IMG/VR virus record: IMGVR_UViG_3300027541_000009
Location: 186,001-250,000 of that record
Length of the DNA: 64,000 bases
Reading direction: 5' to 3' (one strand)
Each line of letters opens with the position of its first letter. The first letter of the stretch is position 1. The translations under genes were made by a program, and so were the position numbers. Positions 16,799 to 43,965 of the stretch are shown here, one piece after another. Under the pieces are notes generated by a model, which saw only the letters and a program-made list of their open reading frames with translations, had not been told where the DNA came from and searched no databases.

Positions 16799-16991
16799 AC
16801 TTGAGGTAGACACTCATAAAACTGTCCACTGACCTCCCAAAACCGACTTGGGAGGTTTTATAATGTCTAAAGACACCTGAGAAACGAATGAGGTACTCAA
16901 ATCTGAACCGACTGATTTTTGTCGGCAGTTTTGTATGGGTTGCTCATTGGGCAACCAAAGTAACCGAAGCAGTGTTTAATGCACTATTCTG

Positions 16992-17417
16992 ATGCTTACA
17001 TTATACACCAGTGGATACAACTATAGCAAGCGTCGTTGCAATCAAGTTGTAGATTGGTTCATTTCCAAACACCTTCCAAGATATAAACTTGAAATCATTG
17101 TCAATCATCGTGGAATGTTACGCGATGGAGTTTATGGTTGGGTAGGAGTAATTGGTTGTAATTGGAGACCAAGATGCTTTGAGATTGAACTACACAATCA
17201 TATGGACCCTGACCATTACACCAGAACCCTTCTACACGAACTCTGGCATGTTTATCAGCATGTTATGGGTGCTCTGAAGGATAAGCACGGAAAGAGGTAC
17301 TGGAGGGGCATAGACCACTCTGAGACGGACTATGAAGACCAACCATGGGAACAACAAGCATTTCAAATGGAAGAAGTGCTTTTCAATGAATACTTAGACT
17401 ACTTGACACAACACTGA
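16992..17417 (+). CDS. HExxH metallopeptidase-like protein
   Basis: TLLHELWHVYQH and downstream Y..QPWE..A motif. Confidence 0.7.
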   Translation: MLTLYTSGYNYSKRRCNQVVDWFISKHLPRYKLEIIVNHRGMLRDGVYGWVGVIGCNWRPRCFEIELHNHMDPDHYTRTLLHELWHVYQHVMGALKDKHGKRYWRGIDHSETDYEDQPWEQQAFQMEEVLFNEYLDYLTQH

Positions 17418-17431
17418 AAACTCTGTACAAT
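17403..17431 (+). promoter_or_regulatory. sigma70-type promoter
   Basis: TTGACA-17 nt-TACAAT. Confidence 0.75.
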
Positions 17432-17455
17432 GACCTTTGTGGAGGTTGAAAAACT

Positions 17456-17674
17456 ATGATCACTATGAAAGCTCCTAAGACCAAGAAGAAATTTGTAAGT
17501 GTAACACCGCTAAGTTCCAAGGCAAAGAATCGCTTTGTGAATATCATGCAATCACTTCATACAATGGAAGTGGAACAAGAAACTGATAACATGTTATTTT
17601 TGGTTTCTATCAATCGACAATACTGCACTTGGATTCCCAAGTCTGGTAATGAACATTGGAAAATTGAGAAATGA
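17456..17674 (+). CDS. Hypothetical protein
   Basis: 72 aa after promoter, GGAGG SD. Confidence 0.7.
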   Translation: MITMKAPKTKKKFVSVTPLSSKAKNRFVNIMQSLHTMEVEQETDNMLFLVSINRQYCTWIPKSGNEHWKIEK

Positions 17675-17982
17675 TTGGATTGATTGCTGCGTTGACTTGT
17701 GGAATTTCTACATACTATGGAGTCGGAGACGGATTTCATGGAAAAGTTACTGCGAATGGTGAGCGGTTTGACGCTTATCGTTGGACTGCAGCTCACCCTT
17801 ATCTACCTATGGGTTCACGCATACGGGTGACAAATCAAGACAATGGTAAACAAGTTATTGTTCGTGTAAATGATCGTGGTCCATACTCACATGCTGATTT
17901 GGATCTTTCTTATGCTGCTTTTGCTCACATTTCTTCTGTAAAAAAAGGTAACGCTGTCGTTTGTTGGAGGGTTGTTGGATGA
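17671..17982 (+). CDS. rlpA: RlpA-like (DPBB) lytic transglycosylase-family protein
   Basis: YYG...FHGK.TANGERFD....TAAH..LP.GS..RVTN..NGK.VIVRVNDRGPY...DLSYAAF signature. Confidence 0.9.
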   Translation: MIGLIAALTCGISTYYGVGDGFHGKVTANGERFDAYRWTAAHPYLPMGSRIRVTNQDNGKQVIVRVNDRGPYSHADLDLSYAAFAHISSVKKGNAVVCWRVVG

Positions 17983-18356
17983 AAAAACTGATTGTTCTTG
18001 CTGCACTATTGTTTGGTTCTCCTGTTTTTGCACAGTCTGCACCAGTAGTTCCTAAGGTAAAAGTTTATCGTCCTTTTGTATATGAAACAAACTGTATTTT
18101 AGAGTATGGTGTTCAAACCTATGATGATGTTTGTAAAGTCATTGAAACTCGTGAAACTGGTGGAGCATTGAGAACTCGTAACATTTTCTCCAATAAGTTT
18201 GGTTTGACTATCAAAGGACGGTTTGATAAAGAGAAAGGATATGTGACTTGGGATAGTCACAACAAATTTGAATATAAGTTTGATTATAAAGTTGGTGGTA
18301 GTGGTTGGACTTATGTAATGCCAGGTGTTCTTCTTGAAAATATTAGTTGGGACTGA
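17979..18356 (+). CDS. Hypothetical exported protein
   Basis: Signal-peptide-like MKKLIVLAALLFGSPVFA; ATGA overlap. Confidence 0.7.
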   Translation: MKKLIVLAALLFGSPVFAQSAPVVPKVKVYRPFVYETNCILEYGVQTYDDVCKVIETRETGGALRTRNIFSNKFGLTIKGRFDKEKGYVTWDSHNKFEYKFDYKVGGSGWTYVMPGVLLENISWD

Positions 18357-18529
18357 TGAAAGTTACTGAACATAACATTCAAGATACAGACTTGAATTTG
18401 GACGATATTATCGAACTAATTCGATTGGTTAAGAAAGAATCAAAAGAGCATGAAGATCGTGCTGTTTTGCTACGCTATGGTGTTTTGATTGGTAAGTTGG
18501 TCTGCCTTCGACATGACTTAATTTCTTAA
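18356..18529 (+). CDS. Hypothetical protein
   Basis: TGATG-coupled ORF. Confidence 0.55.
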   Translation: MKVTEHNIQDTDLNLDDIIELIRLVKKESKEHEDRAVLLRYGVLIGKLVCLRHDLIS

Positions 18530-18573
18530 AAAATTATAAACTACCTTAAATAGTAGTAGAATAGGAGAAAACC

Positions 18574-18738
18574 ATGGTTGTATTTCTTACTGCAACCATT
18601 ATTACTTGCTCTGACGCATTGAGTGTGATTCAACGCATTTCTAAAGTTGTGGGATTAACTGAAGTTCAAAGAACAGAAATTATTCAAGAAATCCGCAAAG
18701 TTATTCCTTCCTGTCCCGTTAAAGTAGTAAAACAATGA
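18574..18738 (+). CDS. Hypothetical protein (54 aa)
   Basis: AGGAG SD, read manually (MVVFLTATIITCSDA...). Confidence 0.6.
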   Translation: MVVFLTATIITCSDALSVIQRISKVVGLTEVQRTEIIQEIRKVIPSCPVKVVKQ

Positions 18739-18908
18739 ATGAAGAATCTCAAATTGACAAGTGGAATCGTGGACTGACTCTCTTTGAGGAAAGTGTATTG
18801 AAACCAGATCCTGAACTTCGCAACTGTGCTCATAACCAAAAGTGTTTTAATGAACTTATGGCAGTTCGTGAACAAGTCCTACAATATCTTAAGACATTGA
18901 GACAATGA
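18735..18908 (+). CDS. Hypothetical protein (57 aa)
   Basis: ATGA-coupled on both sides, read manually. Confidence 0.6.
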   Translation: MNEESQIDKWNRGLTLFEESVLKPDPELRNCAHNQKCFNELMAVREQVLQYLKTLRQ

Positions 18909-19144
18909 GTTCTTATACCTTTTGGTTGATTATATTTGCTTTTGTTTTGTATTTTATTGCTACAGACCAATCAGTAGCGAGGGCATTTTATATGCTAACT
19001 CAACTAGCAAGAGTACAGTATGAAAAGACAAAGTGGTGGATTTTACATAATCCAGCAAATCCAATTGTAAAGTATTTTATGTGGAGAAGAGCATATAAAC
19101 TTGCGAAGGAATTGCAACAGGAGTTAAAATCAAGAAATAAATAA
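18905..19144 (+). CDS. Hypothetical membrane protein
   Basis: N-terminal hydrophobic segment. Confidence 0.65.
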   Translation: MSSYTFWLIIFAFVLYFIATDQSVARAFYMLTQLARVQYEKTKWWILHNPANPIVKYFMWRRAYKLAKELQQELKSRNK

Positions 19145-19164
19145 ACATTATCTGAGTAATACAT

Positions 19165-19482
19165 ATGCTCTCCACTCAATACCGTCTTCGCCTTGAAGCA
19201 ATCTGTGAGCGAATTGTAAAAGGCGAATCTGTAGAGTTAAGCGACATGATTTGGGCAGAGAAGTTGGCAAAAGCAAATCGTTCCGCTGCAACACTTCTAA
19301 GGCAAGCAAGACGCCGTGCTGCAAATCCAGATATGCAAGAAGGAAGTTTAGATGACTTTATGAACGCATTGGATTTGGGTGATCCCGACCCTTCAAATCA
19401 CCGCACTGGATTCAATGGAGCTGATGATATTATTGATTTCTTCACAGGAGACAAACCAGACGATTGGCGACAAAGAGACTGA
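19165..19482 (+). CDS. Hypothetical protein
   Basis: 105-aa ORF with phage-like codon use. Confidence 0.75.
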   Translation: MLSTQYRLRLEAICERIVKGESVELSDMIWAEKLAKANRSAATLLRQARRRAANPDMQEGSLDDFMNALDLGDPDPSNHRTGFNGADDIIDFFTGDKPDDWRQRD

Positions 19483-19703
19483 TGAAATATTTACTTTTAC
19501 TTTTGCCATTTGCAACTCTACCCGCAAGTGCTATCACTTGGAGAGAGTTTTGGGAACCTTTTGAACCAAGAGTTTATTATAGAGAACCAATTTGCACAGA
19601 AGTTGTGTATCGTGAAGAATATGTGCCAGGCAATAGATGGAATCCTGGATATGTAAGGACTTGGAGAGAACGAGTCAGAGTTCCTTGTTCAATTTATAAT
19701 TAA
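19482..19703 (+). CDS. Hypothetical exported protein
   Basis: MKYLLLLLPFATLPASA signal peptide. Confidence 0.65.
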   Translation: MKYLLLLLPFATLPASAITWREFWEPFEPRVYYREPICTEVVYREEYVPGNRWNPGYVRTWRERVRVPCSIYN

Positions 19704-19812
19704 GTTGTATTAAGCAATCCACATAAACCTCCTAGATAGTGGTAGAATAGTAAGGTCATAAAAATGAACTGAAAACTCTTTATTATGATATTCTTTGTGC
19801 GTGGAGGTCATT

Positions 19813-19986
19813 ATGCACAATTTAATTTCTTACAATCAACTTGCTGGGTGGAAAAAAATCGGTAATACGCTAGATGAGTTTATAGACCAGCACGAAATTA
19901 TGAATTCATATTTTGAATGTCTAACTGAATGTGATGAGGATACGCAGAGTTGTAGAAGAATATGTAGAAAACTCTTGACCACATAG
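19813..19986 (+). CDS. Small Cys-rich hypothetical protein
   Basis: GGAGG SD; C-x3-C-x6-C-x3-C C-terminus. Confidence 0.65.
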   Translation: MHNLISYNQLAGWKKIGNTLDEFIDQHEIMNSYFECLTECDEDTQSCRRICRKLLTT

Positions 19987-20064
19987 ACCAGTTTAAAGTC
20001 TGTCCATTCACCCTTGACTTTCGCGGTCAAGGGTTTTATAGTAGGTGCATAGACATCCAAAGCA

Positions 20065-20619
20065 ATGACCTACACAGCAAAACTCAAAGTTTCTTTTGAT
20101 ACTGAATGGACTCCAAGTTATTCGTCTGGAATGTATGACGACGAAACTCTTCCTGAGGAGCATTATACTTTTGAGATTCCCTGTGAAGACATCAACACCA
20201 TTCAACTCTTCCGTTTCTTTGGAACTGTTGCCCGCACGATGGGACATAATGAAATTGGTATTATGAAAGGTGCTTGTTCGCTTGCATTTAATGATATGCG
20301 TAGTGAAGAAGATATGCGTAAAATTTCGGAAGAGTTTGAGCTGATGATGTCAGAGGATTATTCTAAAGAACTCCGTAGGTTGGAAGATGAGATTTATGAT
20401 CTGAAAGCAAAACTTTCACGCTGCCAGCAACCCGAAAATCCTCAATATACCGATGAGGAAATGTCAGCAATGACTCATCAAGAATGGAATGGTGTTGTTC
20501 CTGGGTCTCCTGAAGCAGTTGAGAAAGGTTGTAAGTGTCCTGTAATGGATAATGAAGAGATGCCTGAAGAACGCAAGTGGGTTAATGCTGATTGTCCTAT
20601 TCACGGTAAAGTAAAATGA
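20065..20619 (+). CDS. Hypothetical protein (C-terminal GCKCPVMDN..CPIH)
   Basis: First gene after a class-2 promoter. Confidence 0.75.
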   Translation: MTYTAKLKVSFDTEWTPSYSSGMYDDETLPEEHYTFEIPCEDINTIQLFRFFGTVARTMGHNEIGIMKGACSLAFNDMRSEEDMRKISEEFELMMSEDYSKELRRLEDEIYDLKAKLSRCQQPENPQYTDEEMSAMTHQEWNGVVPGSPEAVEKGCKCPVMDNEEMPEERKWVNADCPIHGKVK

Positions 20620-21103: not shown

Positions 21104-21254
21104 ACCTCTACCTGACAAAAGAGAACTTGATATAATGTGGACTGTTGCAACCAGTACCAGTTTGGAAACTGGCACAAGACCTAACATCCATTTTGCCAGG
21201 ATGCTGTATGATGAGTTCAACGACATCAAACCCCCAGTAGGACTTGGAAAATGA
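21096..21254 (+). CDS. Hypothetical protein, paralog of 30993..31166
   Basis: LPDKRELDIMWTVATS motif; read manually. Confidence 0.6.
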   Translation: MTKPLPDKRELDIMWTVATSTSLETGTRPNIHFARMLYDEFNDIKPPVGLGK

Positions 21255-24637: not shown

Positions 24638-24685
24638 CTTATAAATAAAATGTCTATAGAAACCGCAATTCTCTACGGACAGATT

Positions 24686-24706
24686 AGGTGCTTTCGGGCA
24701 CCTTTT
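24686..24706 (+). terminator. Rho-independent terminator (TTCG loop)
   Basis: AGGTGCT-TTCG-GGCACCT-TTT. Confidence 0.75.
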
Positions 24707-24743
24707 CTATTATAAATACTAATGCGGTTTCTGTAGAATAACG

Positions 24744-25529
24744 ATGACTTACCAAAGTCCAAGAATTTACATATACAAAATTACCTTTGAAGAAGTTCCA
24801 TATTACTATTATGGAGTTCATAAGGAAAAATACTTCAACGAAGAATACTGGGGTTCTCCTACAACAAACAAGTGGTGTTGGGAACTTTATACACCAAAGA
24901 AACAAATACTTCAATTTTTTGATTATACGGATGAAGGTTGGTTGAAAGCACAAGAAATTGAAGAAAGATTGATAAAACCATTTTTTAATACAGATAAATG
25001 GTGTCTAAATGAAAGTTGTGGTGGTAAAGTATCTCTAAAAGTTTTGCGTGAAAGTGGAAATAAATGTTATGAACTTGGTTTAGGAGTTCATTCACTAACC
25101 AAAGAGCAAAGAAGTGAAAATGCTAAAAGAACTGGTAAAATTTATGGAAAAAAAGGAGGTGAAAGAGTATATCAACTTGGTGTTGGAGTTCACGGAAGAA
25201 CAAAAGAACAGATGAGTGAAGATGGGAAACAAGGAGGAAAAAAATCATACGAACTTAAAATAGGAATACACGGAAGAACCAAAGACCAGATGGTTGAAAA
25301 TGGTAGAAAGTGTGGAAATAGAACATATGAACTTGGAATTGGAATACACGGACAAAGCAAAGAAAAAATGACGGAAAATGGAAGAAGAGGTGGAAAAATA
25401 GGAGGTAAAAAAACAAGTTCTCAAAGATGGATGTGTCTTGAAACTGGATTTATCACAAACGCAGGTGCTCTTTCAAATTATCAAAAGAAAAATGGAATAG
25501 ACATCACTAAACGAGTGAGAGTGGTATAA
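24744..25529 (+). CDS. Seg-like GIY-YIG homing endonuclease with four C-terminal repeats
   Basis: IYIYKIT....YYYYGVH..Y.GS N-terminal nuclease motif; four Y(E/Q)L..G(V/I)H..(T/S)K(E/D)...E.(G/A)..G repeats; TATAAATA at 24711. Confidence 0.8.
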   Translation: MTYQSPRIYIYKITFEEVPYYYYGVHKEKYFNEEYWGSPTTNKWCWELYTPKKQILQFFDYTDEGWLKAQEIEERLIKPFFNTDKWCLNESCGGKVSLKVLRESGNKCYELGLGVHSLTKEQRSENAKRTGKIYGKKGGERVYQLGVGVHGRTKEQMSEDGKQGGKKSYELKIGIHGRTKDQMVENGRKCGNRTYELGIGIHGQSKEKMTENGRRGGKIGGKKTSSQRWMCLETGFITNAGALSNYQKKNGIDITKRVRVV

Positions 25530-25609
25530 GGACACTTTACAAACTGGAACAAGGTGCCTTTACAGGGCACCTTTTTTGTTGTATACTGACCTTATGAGTA
25601 ATCACTTAA

Positions 25610-26185: not shown

Positions 26186-26186
26186 A

Positions 26187-26495
26187 ATGACTGAACCAGA
26201 AATCATCGTAGAAAGAAAAAAATACGGAAGATGTGCTGTGGATTATACTATGAGAGTTTATCAAAAACTTGATGAAGAAACCATAATGATTGATGGTGTG
26301 AAGTATCAAAAAGTAGAAGAACCAAAACCACAAACACTTTATGAGATGTTCTGTAAAGAACAATTGGAGTTTGTAAATAGAGAAGTTATTTGTGATATTG
26401 TTGAAAGATGGTTGCCTGATGAAGATGGTGGTGATGATAGATATGCTTGTGGTTGGAATGATTGTGTTGAGAAGTTGAAGTTGAGGTTGAAATGA
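26187..26495 (+). CDS. Hypothetical protein (WLP..GWNDC module)
   Basis: 102 aa. Confidence 0.7.
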   Translation: MTEPEIIVERKKYGRCAVDYTMRVYQKLDEETIMIDGVKYQKVEEPKPQTLYEMFCKEQLEFVNREVICDIVERWLPDEDGGDDRYACGWNDCVEKLKLRLK

Positions 26496-27055
26496 TTGAA
26501 CCATTAAACCATAAATTAGATGTAAGTAAAATCAAAACACTCACAGATGTAAAGAATGTCTTTGAGTGTATGAATTTGTATTCTTATGCTGAAGAAGACC
26601 ACGAAAAGTATGAACTCCTCAAAGAATACTTCACAATTCCAAACGAAGCACAAGAAATCAAATTTGAACTACCACGCAAGTCATTAGAAGAAATCTCACA
26701 AGAGTTTGATGAGAAGATTGATAAACATATTGAGAGTATCAAGCATAAGTTTGCTGAACTCAAATGTCATCAAGAGTATTACTACAATCAAAAGTTCAAT
26801 AGAATTATTGAGAACTTTAAGTATGCGAAGGAACACGGACAATTCCCAGTCAGACTTACAGTAGGTAATTTAGATTGTTCTACTCTTGGTGTGAGCAGTG
26901 CTGTAGATTGGACTACAGAATTTAGAATTGGTAAAGATGTGGTAGGATACTGGGACATCAAACCAAACATCAAAGTGTATCTGGAAAAGAAACCAAATGT
27001 GATTGTGAGATACTTTACTAAGCTACTTCTTGACTTTACTTGGAACGACAAGTGA
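26492..27055 (+). CDS. Hypothetical protein
   Basis: 187 aa, ATGA-coupled. Confidence 0.7.
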   Translation: MIEPLNHKLDVSKIKTLTDVKNVFECMNLYSYAEEDHEKYELLKEYFTIPNEAQEIKFELPRKSLEEISQEFDEKIDKHIESIKHKFAELKCHQEYYYNQKFNRIIENFKYAKEHGQFPVRLTVGNLDCSTLGVSSAVDWTTEFRIGKDVVGYWDIKPNIKVYLEKKPNVIVRYFTKLLLDFTWNDK

Positions 27056-27131
27056 CACTTTCTAAACTGGCACAAGAGCATCCCACAGGTGCTCCTTTTG
27101 GTTGTATAATGACTTCATAACAAACAAACCG

Positions 27132-33416: not shown

Positions 33417-33526
33417 TAAGTGTGGAGTGGTGAAACCACTTGACAAAGACCACTATCAGGTGGTAAAATACTTCCGCGATGGTTTCTCTTACTATTGCCA
33501 CGATTGCTCTAAACACAAACCAAGAA

Positions 33527-34753: not shown

Positions 34754-34765
34754 GTTTCTGGGGGG

Positions 34766-34793
34766 TTGACAACCCTCTTTTTTATGCTATACT
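34766..34793 (+). promoter_or_regulatory. sigma70-type promoter of dam overlapping an upstream terminator; probably leaderless mRNA
   Basis: TTGACA-16 nt-TATACT (extended TG), ATG 7 nt downstream; GGGGGTT-GAC-AACCCTC-T6 hairpin. Confidence 0.7.
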
Positions 34794-34799
34794 TATCCA

Positions 34800-35651: not shown

Positions 35652-35697
35652 CTTGGATCCTCTAAAGTGTACCTATAATGTAAGCAACAAACTTGAA

Positions 35698-36111
35698 ATG
35701 TCCACCCGAGCACGAATCGGTCTTGAACTTAAGAATGGTTCTATTCTCTCTGTGTATCACCACTGGGATGGTTATCCTGAATGGTTGGGTCGTATCCTGA
35801 ACACTCATTACAACACTCGTCAGAAAGTTGCTGACTTGATTGATGGTGGTGATATGTCTTGCTGCTGGACTGATGACCGCTGGAATGATAGTGCAGTGAA
35901 GGGTGTTTATGGACCCAACTATTATTCTTATCGTAACGATGATTGTCCTCCTCGTCTTGATGCTGATTTGTGTGAGTATCTTCTGCCTGCTAATGGTGAA
36001 GAGTATGCCTATGTCTTCCGCAACGGTGAATGGGTGTGCTACAATATGAATTGTTATGAACAAAAACTTCCTGAAGTGATTGAAATCCCCTCTGCTGCGC
36101 TTGCTGTTTAA
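35698..36111 (+). CDS. Hypothetical protein (MSTRARIG..SVYHHWDGYP family)
   Basis: Widespread phage family motif YxHWDGYP...EEYAY; follows repeat copy 1. Confidence 0.8.
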   Translation: MSTRARIGLELKNGSILSVYHHWDGYPEWLGRILNTHYNTRQKVADLIDGGDMSCCWTDDRWNDSAVKGVYGPNYYSYRNDDCPPRLDADLCEYLLPANGEEYAYVFRNGEWVCYNMNCYEQKLPEVIEIPSAALAV

Positions 36112-36128
36112 TTCTTAGGTAAATTATT

Positions 36129-36536
36129 ATGAAACAACAAAACGGATTTATTGACCCTGCTGTTGCTGCTATTGCTGTCGGTGTGGTTGTGATTGGTGGT
36201 CTCATCTTTATTGGTGGTCCACAATATAATGTGTGGCAGCAATCTCTTGCTGGTAAAGCAGAGTTGCAAAAAGCAGAATACACTCGTCAGGTAGCAGTTC
36301 TTGAAGCACAAGCAAAGAAAGATAGTGCTCAACAACTTGCTGATGCTGAAATCATCCGTGCTACTGGTGTTGCTAAGGCAAACCAAATCATTGGTGATAG
36401 TCTGAAGGACAACCGTGAGTATCTTCAGTATCTTTACATTACTGGTCTTGAAGAAGGATCTAACAAAGGTAATGTGACCATCTATGTTCCCACCGAAGGT
36501 GGTATGCCTGTTCCTACTCTTCAAATGAGCAAATGA
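36129..36536 (+). CDS. Membrane-anchored SPFH/HflK-like coiled-coil protein
   Basis: TM helix, then AEIIRA.GVAKANQIIGDSL...YLQYL..YVPTE.GMP. Confidence 0.7.
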   Translation: MKQQNGFIDPAVAAIAVGVVVIGGLIFIGGPQYNVWQQSLAGKAELQKAEYTRQVAVLEAQAKKDSAQQLADAEIIRATGVAKANQIIGDSLKDNREYLQYLYITGLEEGSNKGNVTIYVPTEGGMPVPTLQMSK

Positions 36537-37019
36537 ACAAAAAGTACATTGTTGTTGGATTGATTGGTTTTGCAGTTATTCTTGGTTGGAATGTCTTTCT
36601 AATCCAGCGTGATGACAAAATGTATGATGCTTACTATCGCTCTAAGGCAATAGAGAATCTCAAGAAACCACCCTCTATAGAAATCAGATGAGTATTGTAC
36701 TCGGTGTAGCAATCTACGCAGCACTGGTTGCATTTGTATCCTCCATTATGCTATATTACTTAAAGGTAATGTATTCACGCGAAGAAGCAAAACTTAAGGA
36801 GAAATCCAAATGATCCCCAAACGACTCCGTGACCTTATTAAACAAGCAGAAATGGACAAAGTAGCAGAAGAGTTCTGGAAAGAAGTTGAGCGTGAAGCAG
36901 CGAAACTTGAGGTAACTGTTGACTACTATCTCGCTGAGTTTTACTAATGACTTTTATTCTTGGTATGGGAATCGGTATTCTTTTGACTGTAGGAGTTTCT
37001 TTTATAGTTGCTTCCGACA

Positions 37020-37048
37020 TTGACAATAACGACAACTAATCTTAAACT
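37020..37048 (+). promoter_or_regulatory. sigma70-type promoter
   Basis: TTGACA-17 nt-TAAACT. Confidence 0.65.
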
Positions 37049-37071
37049 TAAGAGGTAATTTACAAAGACAA

Positions 37072-37314
37072 ATGGCACAAAAGTTTCTTTACATCGTTGA
37101 CCACTACATTCCTTTTCCGTCCAGTGAATACGGTGGACTTTGGAATGTGATTGCGGAAAACGACAATGAATGTTTTGATTTGATTTCTGCAGAAGATTCT
37201 GACAATTTTTATGAGCAACACTATACTACTCTTCGTGAAAATGTGTTAAGCGCGAGGACTTATGCGCTTGCTGAGGATGTAGAATCTGCAGTAGTTGAAT
37301 CTTTTACAACCTGA
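37072..37314 (+). CDS. Hypothetical protein (VDH.IPFPSSEYGG)
   Basis: 80 aa after promoter. Confidence 0.7.
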   Translation: MAQKFLYIVDHYIPFPSSEYGGLWNVIAENDNECFDLISAEDSDNFYEQHYTTLRENVLSARTYALAEDVESAVVESFTT

Positions 37315-37470
37315 TGACTCACCACGTTACTCACACCAATAAAATGGTGTTTGATTTGAAGAAACAGTACCAAGAACGTATTGAACAACTGCAAAGTAAA
37401 ATTGCAGAACAAGAACACGAAATCTCACAACTGCAGAAACAAATTGAGTATATGTCGCGTGACAAGTTCT

Positions 37471-37752
37471 ATGATTGCTGAGTTTCCGCATAAAGCACCC
37501 GAAAATTATTATTATGAGTTCGAAGAGTTCAAGCGTGGAGTTATTGCTATATGGTTGTATTGCAATCGTAAGTTTGATTACAATAATGGTGCTCCCACAA
37601 GGACAATCTGGGGATTCTACAAATCCAAGACCAGAGAATACTTTGCCCCAATCAATAGTAAGACAGTTGGTGCTCGTGTAAATATCAACGACACGCGAAA
37701 CTATTCAGCAATGCCTATCAAGCAGTCTCCATTGGATGCGTTCTTTGTATGA
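37471..37752 (+). CDS. Hypothetical protein
   Basis: ATGA-coupled start 37471. Confidence 0.7.
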   Translation: MIAEFPHKAPENYYYEFEEFKRGVIAIWLYCNRKFDYNNGAPTRTIWGFYKSKTREYFAPINSKTVGARVNINDTRNYSAMPIKQSPLDAFFV

Positions 37753-38012
37753 CATACAAACCACAAGTCAATGATTATGTTGAATGGACAAAAGGTGTTG
37801 AAGGTTGGGTTTATTTTAGGGATGACGAATATGTTACGATTGAGTATGTTGTTCGTCCTAAAGACCAAGTAAACTATCACGCCTGCCCCATTCACGCAAA
37901 TGAAAGATTGCTTGTTGTTTGTTATAAAGAAGATTGGAAACATTTAAAGTATGTTAAATCAAGAAAATCAAGATATGAAGAAGAACAGAACTGTCTGGCG
38001 ATTGCTTGCTAA
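37749..38012 (+). CDS. Hypothetical protein
   Basis: ATGA-coupled. Confidence 0.65.
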   Translation: MTYKPQVNDYVEWTKGVEGWVYFRDDEYVTIEYVVRPKDQVNYHACPIHANERLLVVCYKEDWKHLKYVKSRKSRYEEEQNCLAIAC

Positions 38013-38241
38013 GGCACTTGGAGAAAAAGCAAGTAAATGTGATAAAGAAGCGGATAAGGTAGCACTTATCCGCCTTTTGATGTTTTTGAGCATTTTTATT
38101 ACCAACTGCTTCATTATCGCTAATGCAATTCGACATTGGAATGATGAGACTAAGATAGAAGTATTTGTTGAAACTTCTAGTATGCCAGAATATCAAACTC
38201 CACCTATGAGAGTTGCAAATAAACCCCTTGAGTTTGAGTAA
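37975..38241 (+). CDS. Hypothetical membrane protein (WR..AKALGEK..IRHW)
   Basis: TM segment. Confidence 0.65.
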   Translation: MKKNRTVWRLLAKALGEKASKCDKEADKVALIRLLMFLSIFITNCFIIANAIRHWNDETKIEVFVETSSMPEYQTPPMRVANKPLEFE

Positions 38242-38270
38242 CAATAAATAACTAAAAAGTTATTCATAAG

Positions 38271-38915
38271 ATGGACGCTCAAGACATTCGCAATCTTCAA
38301 GAAGCATATATGGAAGTTGTTGAAAACCAGCAACTTGATGAGATGCCATATCAAGTAATGGGTTCTCCTGATGGAAAGAAAGAGAAGAAGATTGGTAAAC
38401 CAGTAAAGAGTAGAAAGTATGCTGACGCAAGAGCAGCAGAACTTGAAGATACTCATAAAAAAACAGGTGGCAAATATCGTTCACAATATGTTGAGGATTA
38501 TGACCTATACGACATCATTCTTTCGCACCTTCTTGATGAAGGATATGCTGATACTGAACAAGCAGCAACGGCAATTATGGGGAATATGAGTGAAGAGTGG
38601 AGAGAGAGTATTATGATTGCTGAAGGAATGACTATGAAGGACTTCAAGGCAAATCGTCAGAAGAATAAGAGGAGATCTGCTTCTGCTGATGCTGAGAAGA
38701 GAGGTCATGTAGGTAAGGAATGGTATAACAGTGGTAGAAGATATTCTCCAGATGAAGCAAAGAGAAGTCGTGCAAATATGGATGATGAAGAAAGACGCAC
38801 GAGACATCGTAGTGCTGTAGATCCTGATAATGAGGATGATAATAACTACTCTGCAGATAAGACGAAGAATCCTAAGAAACTTCGTAAGCAAAAAGCAATG
38901 GGAGAATTAGGATAA
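38271..38915 (+). CDS. Late, highly charged protein; candidate internal head protein
   Basis: ATAAATA promoter at about 38244; LQEAY and LDE prohead-protease-like sites. Confidence 0.65.
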   Translation: MDAQDIRNLQEAYMEVVENQQLDEMPYQVMGSPDGKKEKKIGKPVKSRKYADARAAELEDTHKKTGGKYRSQYVEDYDLYDIILSHLLDEGYADTEQAATAIMGNMSEEWRESIMIAEGMTMKDFKANRQKNKRRSASADAEKRGHVGKEWYNSGRRYSPDEAKRSRANMDDEERRTRHRSAVDPDNEDDNNYSADKTKNPKKLRKQKAMGELG

Positions 38916-38916
38916 A

Positions 38917-39165
38917 ATGCTAACATTTAGAGAGTTCTACGAAATCTGCGAAGCAAAAAGACCAGACACTCCACCTCAAGCAGTTCCTGGAACTTACAAG
39001 AGGAGTGATACTGGTGTGCAAACTTATACTCTTCAAAGATATGAAGGTCCAGAAGGGAAACCAACAAAGAAAGAAGTTAATAAGTTAATTGTAAAGCGTA
39101 GTGGCGGAAAAGAAGTAACAAAGAGACTGAAAAAGTTAGCAAAATCTGTTAAAAAAATTGATTGA
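38917..39165 (+). CDS. Candidate internal head protein
   Basis: MLTFREFYEICEA N-terminus resembling T4 capsid-targeting sequence; basic body. Confidence 0.6.
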   Translation: MLTFREFYEICEAKRPDTPPQAVPGTYKRSDTGVQTYTLQRYEGPEGKPTKKEVNKLIVKRSGGKEVTKRLKKLAKSVKKID

Positions 39166-39205
39166 TTTTTACTTGGATCCTCTAAAGTGTACCTATAATG
39201 TAAGC

Positions 39206-39352
39206 ATGAAACAAATTATGGACTGCTTCGATGACATTCAAATTGAAGAATCTAATGGATTTGATTTTATTGAAAAAGATCTAACTGAACTCATTGAAGA
39301 ATCTAACGACTTCAATCTTAATGAGTATCTTAACTCCAACTATGATTACTGA
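39206..39352 (+). CDS. Small acidic hypothetical protein
   Basis: Follows repeat copy 2. Confidence 0.55.
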   Translation: MKQIMDCFDDIQIEESNGFDFIEKDLTELIEESNDFNLNEYLNSNYDY

Positions 39353-39412
39353 CAGTTTCTAAACTGTCCACCAAATCACCCACACAGAACACTTTTCCTT
39401 TATTATTCTCAA

Positions 39413-39613
39413 ATGACTGAACACATCCCCAACGTGCTCCCTCACATTCAAGAACTGAAAGATGCTTGGCGTCGTCAAGATTTTATCTTTACTAAGCAGC
39501 AACAAGAAGAATATGATTTGCTTCTTGCTACTCGCCGCGAACGTGTAAAGCAATTCTATACTGAAGGACGAGTATTCAAGGGTTCATATAAAGCAAAGGA
39601 AGTAGAGTTCTAA
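39413..39613 (+). CDS. Hypothetical protein
   Basis: ATG just after class-2 -10. Confidence 0.7.
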   Translation: MTEHIPNVLPHIQELKDAWRRQDFIFTKQQQEEYDLLLATRRERVKQFYTEGRVFKGSYKAKEVEF

Positions 39614-39640
39614 ATACTAAAAAGTAGTGTTTAGATAACA

Positions 39641-40249
39641 ATGAAAACCTTTCAGGAGTTTATGTCTATTTGCGAAGAAGTTGATGACAAGTCAAAAGCA
39701 CTTGGATTCCAAGCAACAATCAGAAAAGCAAGACCTGGCGGTCGTATTGGTGCTGAACGCAAAAAGACAACTCCTGAAAAACGCCGTATGAAAGCAGTTG
39801 GCGGTGGTAAAATGGAACCAGCAAAAGAATACAAACCACGCAAGGATATTGGAAAACCAAAGGGTTCACAAATTCAACAACCAGAACAAGAGCGTGGATC
39901 TGCTAGAGAAAGACAACTGGCAGCAGCAAAAGAGGAAAGAAGAAAAGCAGCACAGGCAAGAATTGCTGCTAAGAAAGGTGGAGAATCACCAGCACCAGCA
40001 GCAGAAAAACCAAAAGCAAAAGAAGTAGTAAAAGCAGCAACTAAACTTCTTTCTAAGAAGAAAGCAACAGCAGAACCCGCTCCTGGATACAAACCACAAA
40101 AAGCATCTGGTCTAAGCAGACAAGAAAGATTGCATGTTACAAGAAAGGGAGAACAGAAACTCCGCGATCTTGTAATTGCAGGAGAAAGAGAAAGAGGTAA
40201 AAACATTAAGAGTGAGAAAGACCTCCAACACCGATACACTTCTCGCTGA
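39641..40249 (+). CDS. Candidate internal head protein (K/R/A-rich)
   Basis: CTAAATA late promoter at 39610; MKTFQEFMSICEE similar to T4 capsid-targeting MKTYQEFIAE. Confidence 0.7.
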   Translation: MKTFQEFMSICEEVDDKSKALGFQATIRKARPGGRIGAERKKTTPEKRRMKAVGGGKMEPAKEYKPRKDIGKPKGSQIQQPEQERGSARERQLAAAKEERRKAAQARIAAKKGGESPAPAAEKPKAKEVVKAATKLLSKKKATAEPAPGYKPQKASGLSRQERLHVTRKGEQKLRDLVIAGERERGKNIKSEKDLQHRYTSR

Positions 40250-40308
40250 TACTTACTTGGATCCTCTAAAGTGTCCCTATAGTATAAGCACTCAAACGAA
40301 ACAACATT

Positions 40309-40464
40309 ATGCTCTGGCAAGACCGCAACGGTAACTGGTTCAGCACTGTTTCTCCTATCGACATGAAAATTGAGCGAGCAATGATTGAAGCAAACGCTAA
40401 CAAAGTCTGGGAAGAAAAAGAGCGTTCTGGTGATTGGTTGTTTGATGAAATGTTTGGCGGTTGA
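40309..40464 (+). CDS. Hypothetical protein (51 aa)
   Basis: Read manually, between repeat copy 3 and a class-2 promoter. Confidence 0.6.
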   Translation: MLWQDRNGNWFSTVSPIDMKIERAMIEANANKVWEEKERSGDWLFDEMFGG

Positions 40465-40554
40465 TTAACTGTCCGCCAGCACCCTTTCCAAGCGTCAGGA
40501 AGGGTGCTATAATGTCTTTTAGATACCAAACCACCTGAAACTCTGTAATTCGTA

Positions 40555-41742
40555 ATGATTCCTCATCTGATCAATCTTCGTCCTCACCAAGAACGCGGAG
40601 TTGCTGCTATGCAACAGCATGATAAAGGTCAAGTCATTGTTCCTACTGGTGGTGGCAAGACTCTGAAGATGATCTATGATTGTCTGCGTGAGTTGCAGTC
40701 ACAAACTCCCCAGACCATTGTTGTTGTTGCTCCGCGTATTCTTCTGGCAGAGCAACTGTCTTCGGAGTTCCTGGAGTTTATCACTAACGCTGCTGTTTTC
40801 CATGTTCACAGTGGCGAAACTCATCACGAGTCTTCTACTCGCCCTCAAGAGATTCGCAACTGGGTTGATGCTAATGCCGACAATCATCGCCTGATTGTAA
40901 CCACCTACAACTCTCTGTCGCGTCTTCAAGTGGCAGAAGTTGATGTGGATACCATTTACTTTGACGAGGCACATAATTCTGTTCAGCGTCACTTTTTCCC
41001 TGCAACTGAGCACTTTGCTGCTAATGCACGCCGCTGCTACTTCTTCACTGCTACCAGGAAGACTTCGCTCACTCCTTCTAAACCTGGAATGAACGATCGT
41101 GATGTCTATGGAGATATTATTTGCCGCGTTTCTGCTCCTGAACTTGTTGATGGAGGATACATTATTGCTCCTAAGATTGTAGCGAAGAAGTTTGATGTAC
41201 TTGCACCAAAGCAGGTAACTGCTGAATGTGACAGTAGCAATCTGATGGACACTCTGGAGGATATTGATTGCAAGAAAATCCTGGTATGTGTTAAGTCTGC
41301 GAAGCAACTTATCAACCTGATGTCTCATACTGACTGTGCTTCCCAACTAAATCAGCGTGGTTATTCTTACCTCTACATCACCTCAAAAACTGGAGCGATT
41401 ATTGATGGTAAGAAAGTCAATCGTGAAGTATTCTTTGACACGCTCAATTCTTGGGGTCGTGACCCTAACAAGAAGTTTGTTTGCTTCCATCGCTCTATTT
41501 TGAGCGAAGGAATTAATGTCAGCGAACTAGAGGCGGTCGTCTTTCTTCGCAATATGGATGTGATTGAAATGACCCAAACTATTGGTCGGGTTCTTCGCCT
41601 TGGCGGCAAAGAAAAGGTCTTCGGTCTCTGTGTGGTGCCTGTATATTCCAAAGTTGGAGTATCTACAGAGCGAGCACTCCAGCGAGTTGTTGATGCTGTG
41701 TTTGAGAAGGGTGAGATGGTTGATAGTGTAGTGCGGCGGTGA
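40555..41742 (+). CDS. Superfamily 2 (DEAH; ResIII-like) helicase
   Basis: LRPHQ, PTGGGKT, VVAPRILL.EQ, FDEAH, FTAT, LSEGIN, QTIGRVLR. Confidence 0.9.
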   Translation: MIPHLINLRPHQERGVAAMQQHDKGQVIVPTGGGKTLKMIYDCLRELQSQTPQTIVVVAPRILLAEQLSSEFLEFITNAAVFHVHSGETHHESSTRPQEIRNWVDANADNHRLIVTTYNSLSRLQVAEVDVDTIYFDEAHNSVQRHFFPATEHFAANARRCYFFTATRKTSLTPSKPGMNDRDVYGDIICRVSAPELVDGGYIIAPKIVAKKFDVLAPKQVTAECDSSNLMDTLEDIDCKKILVCVKSAKQLINLMSHTDCASQLNQRGYSYLYITSKTGAIIDGKKVNREVFFDTLNSWGRDPNKKFVCFHRSILSEGINVSELEAVVFLRNMDVIEMTQTIGRVLRLGGKEKVFGLCVVPVYSKVGVSTERALQRVVDAVFEKGEMVDSVVRR

Positions 41743-41855
41743 GTCTCGCCTAAGAACCCAGTCACAGTCAGGGGTCAAAACCTGATTTTTCTTCAATTCT
41801 ACTGCAGCGGTGTCATAGGTCATCCACTGCAACCAAATTCCTGATTTTTACTAAA
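41743..41855. repeat. Copy 1 of duplicated ~110-bp intergenic element
   Basis: 38-bp identical core (41786-41823) with 47971-48008, similar flanks. Confidence 0.85.
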
Positions 41856-41869
41856 GTATAGATTTTACC

Positions 41870-42565
41870 ATGGATTTCGTTGAGTTCGTTCCTGCTTACA
41901 ACCGAATTAAAGCAAAAGGTTTCATAAAGTCTCATCGCAAAGGTGATACTGGAGTTGGTCATACTTTTGAACAAGAACTTGGTTTGACTGAGAATTGTAT
42001 CTCTGGTCCAGATATTGATGGAAAAGAGTTGAAAGCAGCAAGGAAAGGTGCTGGTGGAAAACAAACTCTCTTTACAAAGGAAGGTGAATGGCAGATACCT
42101 CAATTAAAGTTCCTAGAAACTTTTGGATTTCCTCACACAAAACACATTGGGGAATTGTCTGGACAATCTACTGTGACAAGAACCAAAAACAACAGAGGAT
42201 TTTGGATTCATACTGATGATGAATATGTTTCCATAAAGCACGAAGAACTGGAGATTGTTAGGTGGGATTGGGATTCACTTATTAAACAGTTTGCTCACAA
42301 ATTTCCATCTTGTGTTAAAGTATTTGCCGATGTTGAAGTTCGTAATGGTATAGAGTATTTTCACTACAATGAAGCGTATGTCTACATTTCTATTGATAAA
42401 AATCTGTTTCGTAAGGCAATCGAAGATGATGTAATTTCTATTGACTTACGACTGAGAACCCAGTATAATGTTGGCACTGGTAAGGGTGTTCGCAATCGTG
42501 GCACTTGCTTTCGTATAAATCACTCAAATATGGATAAATTGTTTGTAAAAGAGGTTCTTGAATGA
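41870..42565 (+). CDS. MvaI/BcnI-family restriction endonuclease
   Basis: GDTGVGHTFEQELGL.EN....PD..G.ELKA..TLFTK and C-terminal IDLR....RNRGT.FRI. Confidence 0.8.
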   Translation: MDFVEFVPAYNRIKAKGFIKSHRKGDTGVGHTFEQELGLTENCISGPDIDGKELKAARKGAGGKQTLFTKEGEWQIPQLKFLETFGFPHTKHIGELSGQSTVTRTKNNRGFWIHTDDEYVSIKHEELEIVRWDWDSLIKQFAHKFPSCVKVFADVEVRNGIEYFHYNEAYVYISIDKNLFRKAIEDDVISIDLRLRTQYNVGTGKGVRNRGTCFRINHSNMDKLFVKEVLE

Positions 42566-43425
42566 AGGATGTTATTCTTTATGGTGACTGCCGCTCAACT
42601 CTTAAACATTTTGTAGACGCTGGTGTAAAAGCACAAATGTGTGTGACCTCTCCACCATACTACGGTCTGCGTGATTACGGTAACGAAGATAATCAAATTG
42701 GTTTAGAAGAGTCGCCTGAAGAGTTTATCTCCCAACTGGTAGAGGTGTTTCGCGGTGTGCGTGATGTTCTTACAGATGATGGCACATTGTGGGTTAACAT
42801 TGGTGATTCTTATTACAACTATCGTTCTGGTAAAGGTCAGACACTACCTAAGCAATCTGTGGCATCTAACAACCAAGATTTGCCACAAATACGAAATCCT
42901 AGAAGAGGAAATAAACTTGAGGGTCTAAAGGATAAAGATTTGATTGGTATTCCTTGGATGCTAGCATTTGCTTTGCGTGCAGATGGTTGGTATCTACGAC
43001 AGGATATTATTTGGAGCAAACCAAATCCAATGCCCGAAAGTATGAAAGATCGATGTACCAAATCTCACGAATATATCTTCCTCTTATCTAAGAGCAAGAA
43101 CTATTATTTTGATGTTGATTCGATTAAAGAACCCACTGTAGATGGCAAGGAATTAAAACGGAAACGTAGTGTATGGGAAGTAACAACTAAACCATACAAA
43201 GGTTCTCACTTTGCAGTTTATCCTCCAGAACTTATTGAACCTTGTATTATTGCTGGTTCTCGTGAAGGTGACACTATTCTTGACCCATTTATGGGTAGTG
43301 GGACTACTGCTGCTGTTGCCAAATCTTTGGGAAGGAATTATGTTGGATGCGAACTTCACGAGGAGTATGGTAAATTGATTGAAAAGAGAGTTAGTGAAAC
43401 TGTTGGTCTTACCAAGTTTATGTAA
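42562..43425 (+). CDS. N4-cytosine/N6-adenine DNA methyltransferase (beta class)
   Basis: VTSPPY catalytic motif before DPFMGSGTT SAM motif; ATGA overlap with the endonuclease. Confidence 0.92.
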   Translation: MKDVILYGDCRSTLKHFVDAGVKAQMCVTSPPYYGLRDYGNEDNQIGLEESPEEFISQLVEVFRGVRDVLTDDGTLWVNIGDSYYNYRSGKGQTLPKQSVASNNQDLPQIRNPRRGNKLEGLKDKDLIGIPWMLAFALRADGWYLRQDIIWSKPNPMPESMKDRCTKSHEYIFLLSKSKNYYFDVDSIKEPTVDGKELKRKRSVWEVTTKPYKGSHFAVYPPELIEPCIIAGSREGDTILDPFMGSGTTAAVAKSLGRNYVGCELHEEYGKLIEKRVSETVGLTKFM

Positions 43426-43427
43426 CG

Positions 43428-43607
43428 ATGAAAGAAGGATTTACAATGTTCAAGGATACATATGCTGCAATTCCGTTTGGGAATCAGTATCTTATCATTC
43501 ACAATGGTCAGCAACTTGAGAAAGTTTGTAGGACCGAAAGTTCTGCGCGAAAGTATATCACAGACCACAAAAAAGGTAAGTCAATGGCAAAACTTCCAGT
43601 GAATTAA
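43428..43607 (+). CDS. Hypothetical protein (59 aa)
   Basis: Read manually; stop abuts repeat copy 4. Confidence 0.6.
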   Translation: MKEGFTMFKDTYAAIPFGNQYLIIHNGQQLEKVCRTESSARKYITDHKKGKSMAKLPVN

Positions 43608-43654
43608 ACTTGGATCCTCTAAAGTGTACCTATAGTGTAAGACGCATTTACCCT

Positions 43655-43897
43655 ATGCCTCGCGCTCGCAAGCAAACTGCTAATGTCTCTGTTGCTCCCG
43701 AAGTGTCCGTCCCACAGGTACTGATTACTCGTGAACAATACTTCCAAGACATTCAGGTTCGCTGGCAAATCCATCAGTATGAAGTCAACAAACTTCGTGA
43801 AGATGTGGTGAAGTTCACTCAAACTGTTTCGCCTTATGTGAAGCAAGTATTGAACTTTATTGAACAACAAATATCTGCCCGTCGTGTGGCAGTATAA
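43655..43897 (+). CDS. Hypothetical protein
   Basis: After repeat copy 4. Confidence 0.65.
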   Translation: MPRARKQTANVSVAPEVSVPQVLITREQYFQDIQVRWQIHQYEVNKLREDVVKFTQTVSPYVKQVLNFIEQQISARRVAV

Positions 43898-43965
43898 AAA
43901 CTGACACAGGAGCACTTGCAATTTAGCAAGTGCTCCTTTATTGTACCTTTGTTCGTAAAACTTCA

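What the first reader, a model, noticed from the sequence alone, without database searches (positions are those of the whole stretch)
16809..43944. Second early-promoter class: 18-bp dyad operator at fixed distance, with a hairpin over the -35 region
Seen in sequence: GACACT-cataaa-ACTGTC (16809), ACCAGT-ttaaag-TCTGTC (19987), GACACT-ttacaa-ACTGGA (25531), GACACT-ttctaa-ACTGGC (27054), GACAGT-ttctaa-ACTGTC (39351, perfect dyad), GGCGGT-tgatta-ACTGTC (40456) and GGCAGT-ataaaa-ACTGAC (43888). Each is followed 32-34 nt later by a TAnnnT -10, and 6 of 7 have a GC-rich hairpin of unrelated sequence between them. The right half resembles AAAGTGT(A/C)C in the 29-bp repeat, so one factor may serve both classes. 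Inference: binding site for a dimeric activator (host, or virion-delivered), with the hairpin acting as an upstream terminator or cruciform. An upstream motif has been reported for early genes of marine cyanomyoviruses, so this may be related to it rather than new.
Basis: partly seen in the sequence, partly recalled or inferred. Interest (0 to 1): 0.6.

Follow-up and report, generated by a model that had tools for sequence, protein, structure and literature searches.

The report
Cyanophage early-promoter palindrome with nested terminators
The seven dyads are real copies (an eighth was found) of a palindromic upstream promoter element shared by marine cyanomyoviruses and probably already published for phage Syn9, so the finding is solid but not new; the protein that reads it is still unknown.

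Summary
All seven dyads sit at the stated coordinates. A whole-genome scan adds an eighth at 21156. All eight lie on the + strand at gene ends, each 32-34 nt upstream of a TAnnnT box.

The element is not special to this genome. The same palindrome, GmCAsT-N6-AsTGkC (often with TGT/ACA flanks), at the same distance from a -10 box, occurs in:
- the intergenic regions of Syn9 between 43 and 54 kb
- P-TIM40, S-PM2, P-SSM2, P-HM2, S-SKS1, Bellamy and S-B43
- the unrelated cyanomyovirus S-TIM5
- at least 120 environmental viral contigs, where the distance peaks sharply at 32 nt

It is absent from T4, KVP40 and P-SSP7. It is not enriched in five Synechococcus/Cyanobium genomes.

The two half-sites do not covary, so this is a DNA site for a protein, not an RNA hairpin. 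The GC-rich hairpin is optional: 6 of 8 sites here and about 40% of sites elsewhere. It has a U-rich tail and keeps its pairing in a relative where the dyad has decayed. It is an intrinsic terminator nested in the promoter spacer.

This is most likely the early-gene regulatory element reported for Syn9 and P-TIM40 by Doron et al. 2016, a paper I could not read. The binding factor is unknown, and no read data could be obtained.

The parts
16809..16826 (+). palindromic upstream element, site 1 (GACACT-N6-ACTGTC)
   Evidence: centre about -53.5 from the predicted start
16831..16857 (+). spacer hairpin, site 1, followed by TTTT that runs into the -10 box
   Evidence: MFE -15.4, z -4.9
16859..16864 (+). 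-10 box TATAAT, site 1
   Evidence: 32 nt after the dyad
19987..20004 (+). palindromic upstream element, site 2; starts directly after the stop codon of ORF 19795-19986
20010..20034 (+). spacer hairpin and terminator, site 2; a TTGACT -35 hexamer lies in its stem
   Evidence: MFE -15.1, z -5.0; top terminator-like call of the independent scan
20037..20042 (+). -10 box TATAGT, site 2
   Evidence: 32 nt after the dyad
   Evidence: matrix score 14.3, next below the seven listed sites
21207..21212 (+). -10 box TATGAT, site 3; only a weak 5-bp hairpin at 21185-21203
   Evidence: 33 nt after the dyad; MFE -5.1, z -1.1
25531..25548 (+). palindromic upstream element, site 4
25551..25573 (+). spacer hairpin and terminator, site 4, followed by TTTTTTGTTG
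   Evidence: MFE -14.2, z -4.5; terminator-like call
25582..25587 (+). -10 box TATACT, site 4 (TTTACA lies 17 nt upstream)
27054..27071 (+). palindromic upstream element, site 5; overlaps the TGA stop of ORF 26492-27055
27076..27094 (+). spacer hairpin and terminator, site 5
   Evidence: MFE -9.2, z -1.9; terminator-like call
27105..27110 (+). -10 box TATAAT, site 5
   Evidence: 33 nt after the dyad
39351..39368 (+). palindromic upstream element, site 6; perfect dyad that overlaps the TGA stop of ORF 39158-39352; no hairpin follows
39401..39406 (+). -10 box TATTAT, site 6; the predicted start falls on the A of the ATG at 39413 (leaderless)
40456..40473 (+). palindromic upstream element, site 7, upstream of the helicase gene 40555-41742
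   Evidence: helicase genes of Syn9 and Bellamy carry the element at the same place
40479..40507 (+). spacer hairpin, site 7 (poor T tract)
   Evidence: MFE -15.4, z -3.3
40508..40513 (+). -10 box TATAAT, site 7
   Evidence: 34 nt after the dyad
43888..43905 (+). palindromic upstream element, site 8; contains the TAA stop of ORF 43610-43897
43908..43937 (+). spacer hairpin and terminator, site 8
   Evidence: MFE -22.3, z -8.5; top terminator-like call; pairing kept by a compensatory T-A to C-G change in relative L222
43939..43944 (+). -10 box TATTGT, site 8
   Evidence: 33 nt after the dyad

Best explanation
Each site is a compact promoter cassette of the kind that marine cyanomyoviruses place in front of small genes in their hyperplastic, presumably early, region.

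An 18-bp palindrome, GmCAsT-N6-AsTGkC (24 bp with its TGT/ACA flanks), lies about 53-55 bp upstream of the predicted transcription start. It is followed 32 +/- 1 nt later by a good -10 box. The -35 hexamer is weak or absent.

The palindrome is most likely bound as duplex DNA by a two-fold symmetric protein that is present when infection begins. This would be a host protein or a virion-delivered one. It would help the host RNA polymerase use these -35-poor promoters.

The roughly 32-nt stretch between palindrome and -10 box is free in sequence. In about half of the cassettes it holds an intrinsic terminator that ends the preceding transcription unit, so that terminator and next promoter overlap.

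Shown here: the motif, its symmetry, the fixed spacing, its spread across phages, its lack of enrichment in host-type genomes, and the terminator-like nature and independence of the hairpin.

Inferred: protein binding, activation rather than repression, early timing, and the exact start sites.
For: Sites and spacing in the window.

Same element at 31-33 nt from TAnnnT in other phages:
- Syn9 at 43-54 kb
- P-TIM40, S-PM2, P-SSM2 and P-HM2, with 7-16 matches against 0-2 for the control
- S-SKS1, Bellamy and S-B43
- S-TIM5

The distance from the last dyad base to the -10 box peaks at 32 (60 sites), 33 (26) and 31 (8).

Invariant C3/G16 and A4/T15, with no covariation at pair 5/14. That pair is complementary in 10 of 31 sites against 15 expected.

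Conserved Y-R-T lies 6-8 nt after the -10 box, and no conserved -35 is seen.

Hairpins:
- MFE <= -10 in 39% of spacers against 2.7% of shuffles
- U-rich tails: at least 5 T in 8 nt in 48% of hairpin sites against 12% of sites without one
- independent terminator calls at 20010, 25551, 27076 and 43908
- a compensatory change in L222, where the dyad has decayed and another promoter has replaced this one

Not enriched in host-type genomes. Absent from T4, KVP40 and P-SSP7.
Against: - No transcript data. Start sites and timing are therefore unproven here.
- A centre near -53.5 is not a classical activator position (-41.5 or -61.5).
- No candidate binding protein was identified.
- If a host factor is used, one would expect some host sites. 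The pattern is at or below control level in five picocyanobacterial genomes.
- That this element is the published Syn9 early element rests on my memory of the abstract of Doron et al. 2016. The paper is not held.
Confidence: 0.75

Rival explanations
1. The palindrome is an operator for a phage-encoded repressor made early in infection. The repressor shuts these promoters off at the early-to-middle switch. The promoters themselves would fire on their -10 box alone.
For: - The element is phage-specific and not enriched in host-type genomes.
- Its symmetry and lack of covariation fit any dimeric DNA binder.
- Several sites carry a usable -35 hexamer, such as TTGACT at 20014 and TTTACA at 25559.
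Against: - A site at -62 to -45 does not overlap the polymerase footprint at -35 and -10, which is a poor place for simple repression.
- The rigid 32 +/- 1 nt spacing to the -10 box suggests a stereospecific contact with polymerase.
- Most sites lack a -35 hexamer.
- The element occurs in two unrelated myovirus lineages, which is easier to explain by a shared host component.
Confidence: 0.15
2. The similarity is a footprint of mobile promoter-terminator cassettes (PeSL-like) spread by recombination. It would be kept by common descent and as recombination homology, not because a protein reads the palindrome.
For: - The sites sit between small ORFs in a hyperplastic region.
- Related contigs show cassette or segment replacement next to such sites.
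- PeSL cassettes are documented in T4-type phages (PMC2839356, PMC4122927).
Against: - Only the palindrome and the -10 box are conserved. The sequence between and around them is unrelated from site to site.
- The same positions stay invariant across very distant phages.
- The truly repeat-like class I cassette, 14 near-identical copies, looks quite different.
Confidence: 0.06
3. The dyad acts in RNA, as a 3'-end stem-loop or processing site of the upstream message.
For: - It lies at or over the upstream stop codon, so it would be in the 3' end of that transcript.
- Site 39351 could form a perfect 6-bp stem.
Against: - No compensatory variation. Pair 5/14 is mostly G/G or C/C (77 G against 57 C opposite a fixed G).
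- Several window sites would pair poorly.
- Its position is fixed relative to the downstream -10 box, while its offset from the upstream stop varies from -11 to +9 nt.
- No Rfam family matches.
Confidence: 0.03

Closest known systems
Early-gene regulatory element of T4-like cyanophages (Doron et al. 2016, ISME J 10:1437, Syn9 and P-TIM40). Cited from my memory of the abstract; the paper is not held.
   Same: The same palindrome and -10 architecture fills the intergenic regions between the small genes of Syn9 at 43-54 kb and occurs in P-TIM40 at 50-54 kb. It is abundant in cyanomyovirus isolates and environmental contigs, as that abstract states for its element. The promoters lack a canonical -35.
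   Different: I could not compare with the published logo or start-site list. Whether that paper describes the two-fold symmetry, the 24-bp extent or the nested terminators is unknown to me.
PeSL (promoter-early stem-loop) cassettes of T4-type phages (PMC2839356, PMC4122927)
   Same: A composite of an intrinsic terminator and an early promoter between small ORFs of hyperplastic regions. It is linked to gene replacement between close relatives. A stem-loop in S-PM2 discussed in a PeSL context (11369-11391, PMC4503421) is the spacer hairpin of one such site.
   Different: In PeSLs the stem-loop lies just upstream of a full sigma-70 promoter with a good -35, preceded by an AT-rich stretch (PMC4122927). 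Here the stem-loop lies inside the promoter, between a conserved palindrome and the -10 box. It occupies the -35 region and is optional.
Activator-dependent promoters of the CRP/FNR type, including cyanobacterial NtcA sites (from general knowledge)
   Same: Two 5-6 bp inverted half-sites separated by 6 bp, a fixed phase to a TAnnnT box, and a weak or missing -35.
   Different: The half-site sequence (ACAGT) is neither CRP (TGTGA) nor NtcA (GTA-N8-TAC). The centre is near -53.5, not -41.5 or -61.5. The pattern is not enriched in picocyanobacterial genomes.
UP elements and Alt-assisted early promoters of phage T4 (from general knowledge; PMC2988021)
   Same: An extra upstream promoter element between -40 and -65 that strengthens early promoters read by host polymerase.
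   Different: UP elements are A/T tracts read by the alpha subunit. This element has invariant G/C positions and dyad symmetry, and it is absent from T4 and KVP40.

Membership tests
Cyanomyovirus early-gene upstream element (Doron et al. 2016) | Motif shared with Syn9 and P-TIM40 and widespread among T4-like cyanophages | tested here: met
   A matrix from the window's sites and degenerate patterns recover the same architecture in Syn9, P-TIM40, S-PM2, P-SSM2, P-HM2, S-SKS1, Bellamy and S-B43. Backwards controls give 0-2. At least 120 IMG/VR stretches match.
Cyanomyovirus early-gene upstream element (Doron et al. 2016) | Sits at a fixed distance upstream of a -10-like box, without a canonical -35 | tested here: met
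   32-34 nt in the window. The peak is at 32 nt in 124 environmental matches. No conserved -35 is seen.
Cyanomyovirus early-gene upstream element (Doron et al. 2016) | Drives transcripts that start behind it and are expressed early in infection | not testable with these tools
The record is an uncultivated viral contig.
Cyanomyovirus early-gene upstream element (Doron et al. 2016) | Identity with the published sequence logo | not testable with these tools
   The paper is not held under its PMC id or its DOI, and no held paper quotes the motif.
PeSL promoter-terminator cassette | Stem-loop that acts as an intrinsic terminator, combined with an early promoter | tested here: met
   Terminator-like calls at four sites, U-rich tails and a compensatory change in a relative. 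Function was not measured.
PeSL promoter-terminator cassette | Stem-loop lies upstream of a complete sigma-70 promoter (-35 and -10, N17) | tested here: not met
   The stem-loop lies between the palindrome and the -10 box, over the -35 position. The -35 match is at most 3 of 6 in 18 of 31 sites.
PeSL promoter-terminator cassette | Concentrated in hyperplastic regions and next to indels or replacements between close relatives | tested here: inconclusive
   All eight lie among small ORFs between the tail-fibre and baseplate genes. There is one promoter swap and one segment replacement in related contigs. That is too few cases for statistics.
NtcA / CRP-family binding site | Consensus GTA-N8-TAC (NtcA) or TGTGA-N6-TCACA (CRP), centred at -41.5 or -61.5 | tested here: not met
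   The consensus is GmCAsT-N6-AsTGkC, centred at -53.5 to -55.5.
Intrinsic (Rho-independent) terminator (the hairpin only) | GC-rich stem-loop followed by a T tract on the transcribed strand, at the end of a gene | tested here: met
   Five of the six hairpins have T-rich tails. Four are among the best terminator-like calls. Site 40479-40507 has a poor T tract.

The most novel reading that the evidence does not exclude
Two readings remain open.

1. The published cyanophage early motif may not be this palindrome.
2. Its symmetry and its sharing with the unrelated myovirus S-TIM5 may not have been noticed.

In either case this would be the operator of an unidentified dimeric factor, present at the onset of infection, that several cyanophage lineages use to capture host polymerase at -35-less promoters. 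The routine nesting of a terminator inside the activator-to--10 spacer would be a promoter layout not described before.
Probability: 0.15. Interest if true: 0.6.

Novelty: already known. Interest (0 to 1): 0.25.

Why it matters
The element marks the transcription units that a very abundant group of ocean viruses probably switches on first.

The sites let one annotate probable early promoters and unit boundaries in uncultivated cyanophage contigs from sequence alone.

The open question is which protein reads the palindrome: host, virion-delivered or phage-made. It can be tested directly with the defined 18-24 bp site. The element's presence in two unrelated myovirus lineages, and its scarcity in host-type genomes, narrows the candidates.

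For this window the result is mainly annotation, not discovery.

Tried and rejected
- **Read evidence.** I did not try to reach reads another way, and read laying was not used.
- **Literature.** Doron et al. 2016 could not be opened by PMC id or DOI. Nine text searches and several look-ups found no held paper that quotes the Syn9 early motif (29, 40, 41, 43, 44, 82).
- **Loose dyad matching.** Up to 3 mismatches gives 68 hits genome-wide, so it does not discriminate on its own. A position matrix with the -10 constraint was needed.
- **Host-regulon idea.** The strict dyad, and the dyad plus -10 pattern, are at or below control level in five Synechococcus/Cyanobium genomes. These genomes were chosen by psbA similarity and may not include the true host.
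- **RNA hairpin or cruciform reading of the dyad.** Rejected for lack of covariation.
- **Known RNA family.** None at these sites.
- **One factor for both classes.** Class I copies have no left half-site, and the 7-nt resemblance lies next to the -10 box. The 14 copies are near-identical, so they count as one observation. This is unsupported but not excluded.
- **Alignments with relative L222.** Those at the 40456 and 39351 sites were uninformative because the neighbourhood differs there.


Full report
**Context.** The window is the reverse strand of bases 33918-97917 of a 204,829-bp viral record. It is an uncultivated IMG/VR contig rated 78% complete. It is a T4-like cyanomyovirus. Its helicase is about 60% identical to those of Synechococcus phages S-B43, S-SKS1 and Bellamy. 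It carries two Photo_RC-family (psbA/psbD-type) genes. The one used as query (359 aa) is closest, at 94%, to a Synechococcus MAG. The region holding the finding lies between tail-fibre-like genes (4240-16798) and baseplate genes (from about 57.9 kb). It is packed with small + strand ORFs of unknown function. This is the same layout as the 43-54 kb block of Syn9.

**Observation.** A position matrix scanned over the whole record separates them from background and finds an eighth site at 21156. No comparable site lies elsewhere in the 205 kb.

- All eight are on the + strand.
- Six of them abut, overlap or lie within 11 nt of the stop codon of the preceding ORF; the stop-to-dyad offset runs from -11 to +9 nt.
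- Each is followed 32-34 nt later by a TAnnnT hexamer.
- The opposite strand has no such arrangement, although the element is palindromic.
- Six of the listed seven have a stable hairpin of unrelated sequence in the interval. Site 39351 has none, and 21156 has only a weak one.

**The element is shared by cyanomyoviruses.** A matrix built only from the window's sites finds the same architecture in S-SKS1, Bellamy and Syn9. In Syn9 nearly every intergenic gap between the small genes at 43-54 kb holds it, followed by TATTCT or TATACT. Degenerate patterns give these counts, with the backwards-read control in brackets:

| Record | Matches | Control |
|---|---|---|
| S-B43 | 11 | 2 |
| S-SKS1 | 10 | 2 |
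| Bellamy | 4 | 1 |
| Syn9 | 6 | 2 |
| P-TIM40 | 16 | 0 |
| S-PM2 | 7 | 0 |
| P-SSM2 | 12 | 0 |
| P-HM2 | 12 | 0 |

- T4, KVP40 and the podovirus P-SSP7 have none above control.
- S-TIM5, a cyanomyovirus that is not T4-like, has the same dyad 33 nt from TATACT-type boxes.
The observed distance from the last dyad base to the -10 box peaks at 32 (60 sites), 33 (26) and 31 (8). This is an independent confirmation of the fixed geometry.
- The helicase gene carries the element in this phage (40456), in Syn9 and in Bellamy.

**Anatomy.** I used 31 curated sites from four phages.

- The consensus is G(A/C)CA(G/C)T-N6-A(G/C)TG(T/G)C. C3/G16 are invariant and A4/T15 nearly so. TGT is preferred before the element and ACA after it, giving a 24-bp palindrome.
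- The variable pair 5/14 shows no compensation. It is complementary in 10 of 31 sites against 15 expected, and is mostly G/G or C/C. With position 5 fixed as G in the environmental set, position 14 is G in 77 sites and C in 57.
- So each half-site matches one consensus independently. This is what a symmetric DNA-binding protein would produce, and not what an RNA stem or a cruciform would.
- Between element and -10 box there is almost no sequence conservation and no clear -35.
- A conserved pyrimidine-purine-T lies 6-8 nt after the -10 box and marks the likely start. This places the dyad centre at -53.5 to -55.5.

**The hairpin.** It is frequent but optional.

- It is present in 6 of 8 sites here and in about 40% of environmental sites (MFE <= -10 in 39% against 2.7% of shuffles). 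The spacing is unchanged whether or not it is present.
- Hairpin-bearing sites have U-rich tails: at least 5 T in 8 nt in 48%, against 12% of sites without a hairpin.
- An independent scan ranks the hairpins at 20010, 25551, 27076 and 43908 among the best terminator-like features of the region.
- In a relative about 70% identical (L222), the site matching 43888 has lost the promoter-proximal half of the dyad and carries a class-I-type promoter instead. The hairpin is retained with a T-A to C-G compensatory change.
- The hairpin is therefore a separately selected intrinsic terminator of the upstream unit, lodged in the free spacer of the next promoter. Terminator-over--35 promoters without the dyad also exist at 34760, 33440 and 54625.

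**Who reads the palindrome?** This could not be settled.

- The strict dyad, and the dyad plus -10 pattern, are at or below control level in five Synechococcus/Cyanobium genomes. So it is not the site of a host regulator with many chromosomal targets.
- Its presence in two unrelated myovirus lineages argues for a component common to the host cell or the polymerase, or for horizontal spread of both element and factor.
- It matches neither NtcA, CRP nor UP-element consensus (from general knowledge).

**Relation to the 29-bp repeat.**

- That class has 14 near-identical copies at 35664-53783.
- It is found only in contigs identical to this genome, plus a few diverged relatives.
- It has no left half-site, and its AAGTGT(A/C)C stretch abuts the -10 box.
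- The dyad class is thus the ancient, widespread one and the repeat the lineage-specific one. A shared factor is not supported.

**Comparison with the literature.**

- From my memory of its abstract, Doron et al. 2016 reported a novel regulatory element controlling early genes of Syn9 and P-TIM40, abundant and conserved among T4-like cyanophages, with host-like promoters driving middle genes.
- The element found here dominates the intergenic regions of Syn9 at 43-54 kb, occurs in P-TIM40, and shows that same wide distribution. I take it to be that element, with a probability of about 0.85.
- I could not read the paper.
- The terminator-promoter composite resembles the PeSL cassettes of T4-type phages (PMC2839356, PMC4122927), except that the stem-loop is nested inside the promoter.
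- A stem-loop in S-PM2 discussed in a PeSL context (11369-11391, PMC4503421) is the spacer hairpin of one such site.

**Limits.** No transcript data were available. Early timing, start sites, termination and protein binding are all inferred.

**Verdict.** The element is an already described kind of cyanophage promoter rather than something new.

Noticed in passing
window 35664-53783 (14 copies, e.g. 39184, 40268, 43621): Class I promoter-like repeat of about 37 bp, near-identical in all copies (core AACTTGGATCCTCT-AAAGTGTACC-TATAGT). It has no canonical -35 at 16-18 nt. It is found only in IMG/VR contigs identical to this genome and, in a variant form, in a few relatives about 70% identical.
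   Followed up: partly
L222:1300-1440 (minus strand) against window 43840-43975: In a relative about 70% identical, the class II promoter at this intergenic site is replaced by a class-I-type promoter. The proximal dyad half has decayed, while the terminator hairpin is kept with a compensatory change. Promoter classes look like exchangeable cassettes.
   Followed up: partly
L224 (IMGVR_UViG_3300024507_000369), part not matching the window beyond window 47917: A contig identical to the window over 41934-47917 then continues with a different segment. That segment carries four dyad promoters of the Syn9 type (TATTCT box with a conserved leader). This is a segment replacement whose edge lies at the repeated element at 47918.
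   Followed up: no
window 41743-41869 and 47918-48054: Two copies of an intergenic element of about 125 nt, 84% identical, with a nearly invariant 60-nt core. No Rfam match and no obvious ORF. Function unknown.
   Followed up: partly
L239 (S-TIM5 165049, 165335, 170893; minus strand 168062) and L240 (130794): The non-T4-like cyanomyovirus S-TIM5 carries the same dyad (GYCAGT-N6-AsTGGC) about 33 nt upstream of TATACT or TATCAT boxes. The element therefore crosses phage lineages.
   Followed up: partly
window 39401-39415: The -10 box of the 39351 promoter ends 6 nt before the ATG of ORF 39413-39613. The predicted start is therefore the A of the start codon (leaderless). Three other sites have predicted leaders of only 15-16 nt.
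   Followed up: no
window 34760-34793, 33440-33469, 54625-54653: Three further promoters have a perfect TTGACA lying inside or beside a GC-rich hairpin but no dyad. The terminator-over--35 layout is therefore general in this genome.
   Followed up: no
window 16908-16925: A terminator-like hairpin with a T tract lies inside the 121-nt leader between the 16809 promoter and ORF 16992-17417. It may be an attenuator or the end of a short transcript.
   Followed up: no
window 24638-24743: Two T4-late-promoter-like TATAAATA boxes and a terminator hairpin (24686-24703) precede ORF 24744-25529, which weakly resembles a homing endonuclease. A late-type unit is thus embedded among the early-type cassettes.
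   Followed up: no
window 2722-2807 and 3120-3192: tRNA-Leu(TAA) and tRNA-Thr(TGT) genes.
   Followed up: no
G000:C1:131919-132791 (outside the window): The phage gene with the stronger Photo_RC (psbA-type) match, used as query, is 94% identical in protein to that of a Synechococcus MAG (ChBW.bin.23) and 92-93% to a Cyanobium isolate (N.Huapi 1H5) and other picocyanobacterial MAGs. This hints at a Synechococcus/Cyanobium-type host.
   Followed up: no
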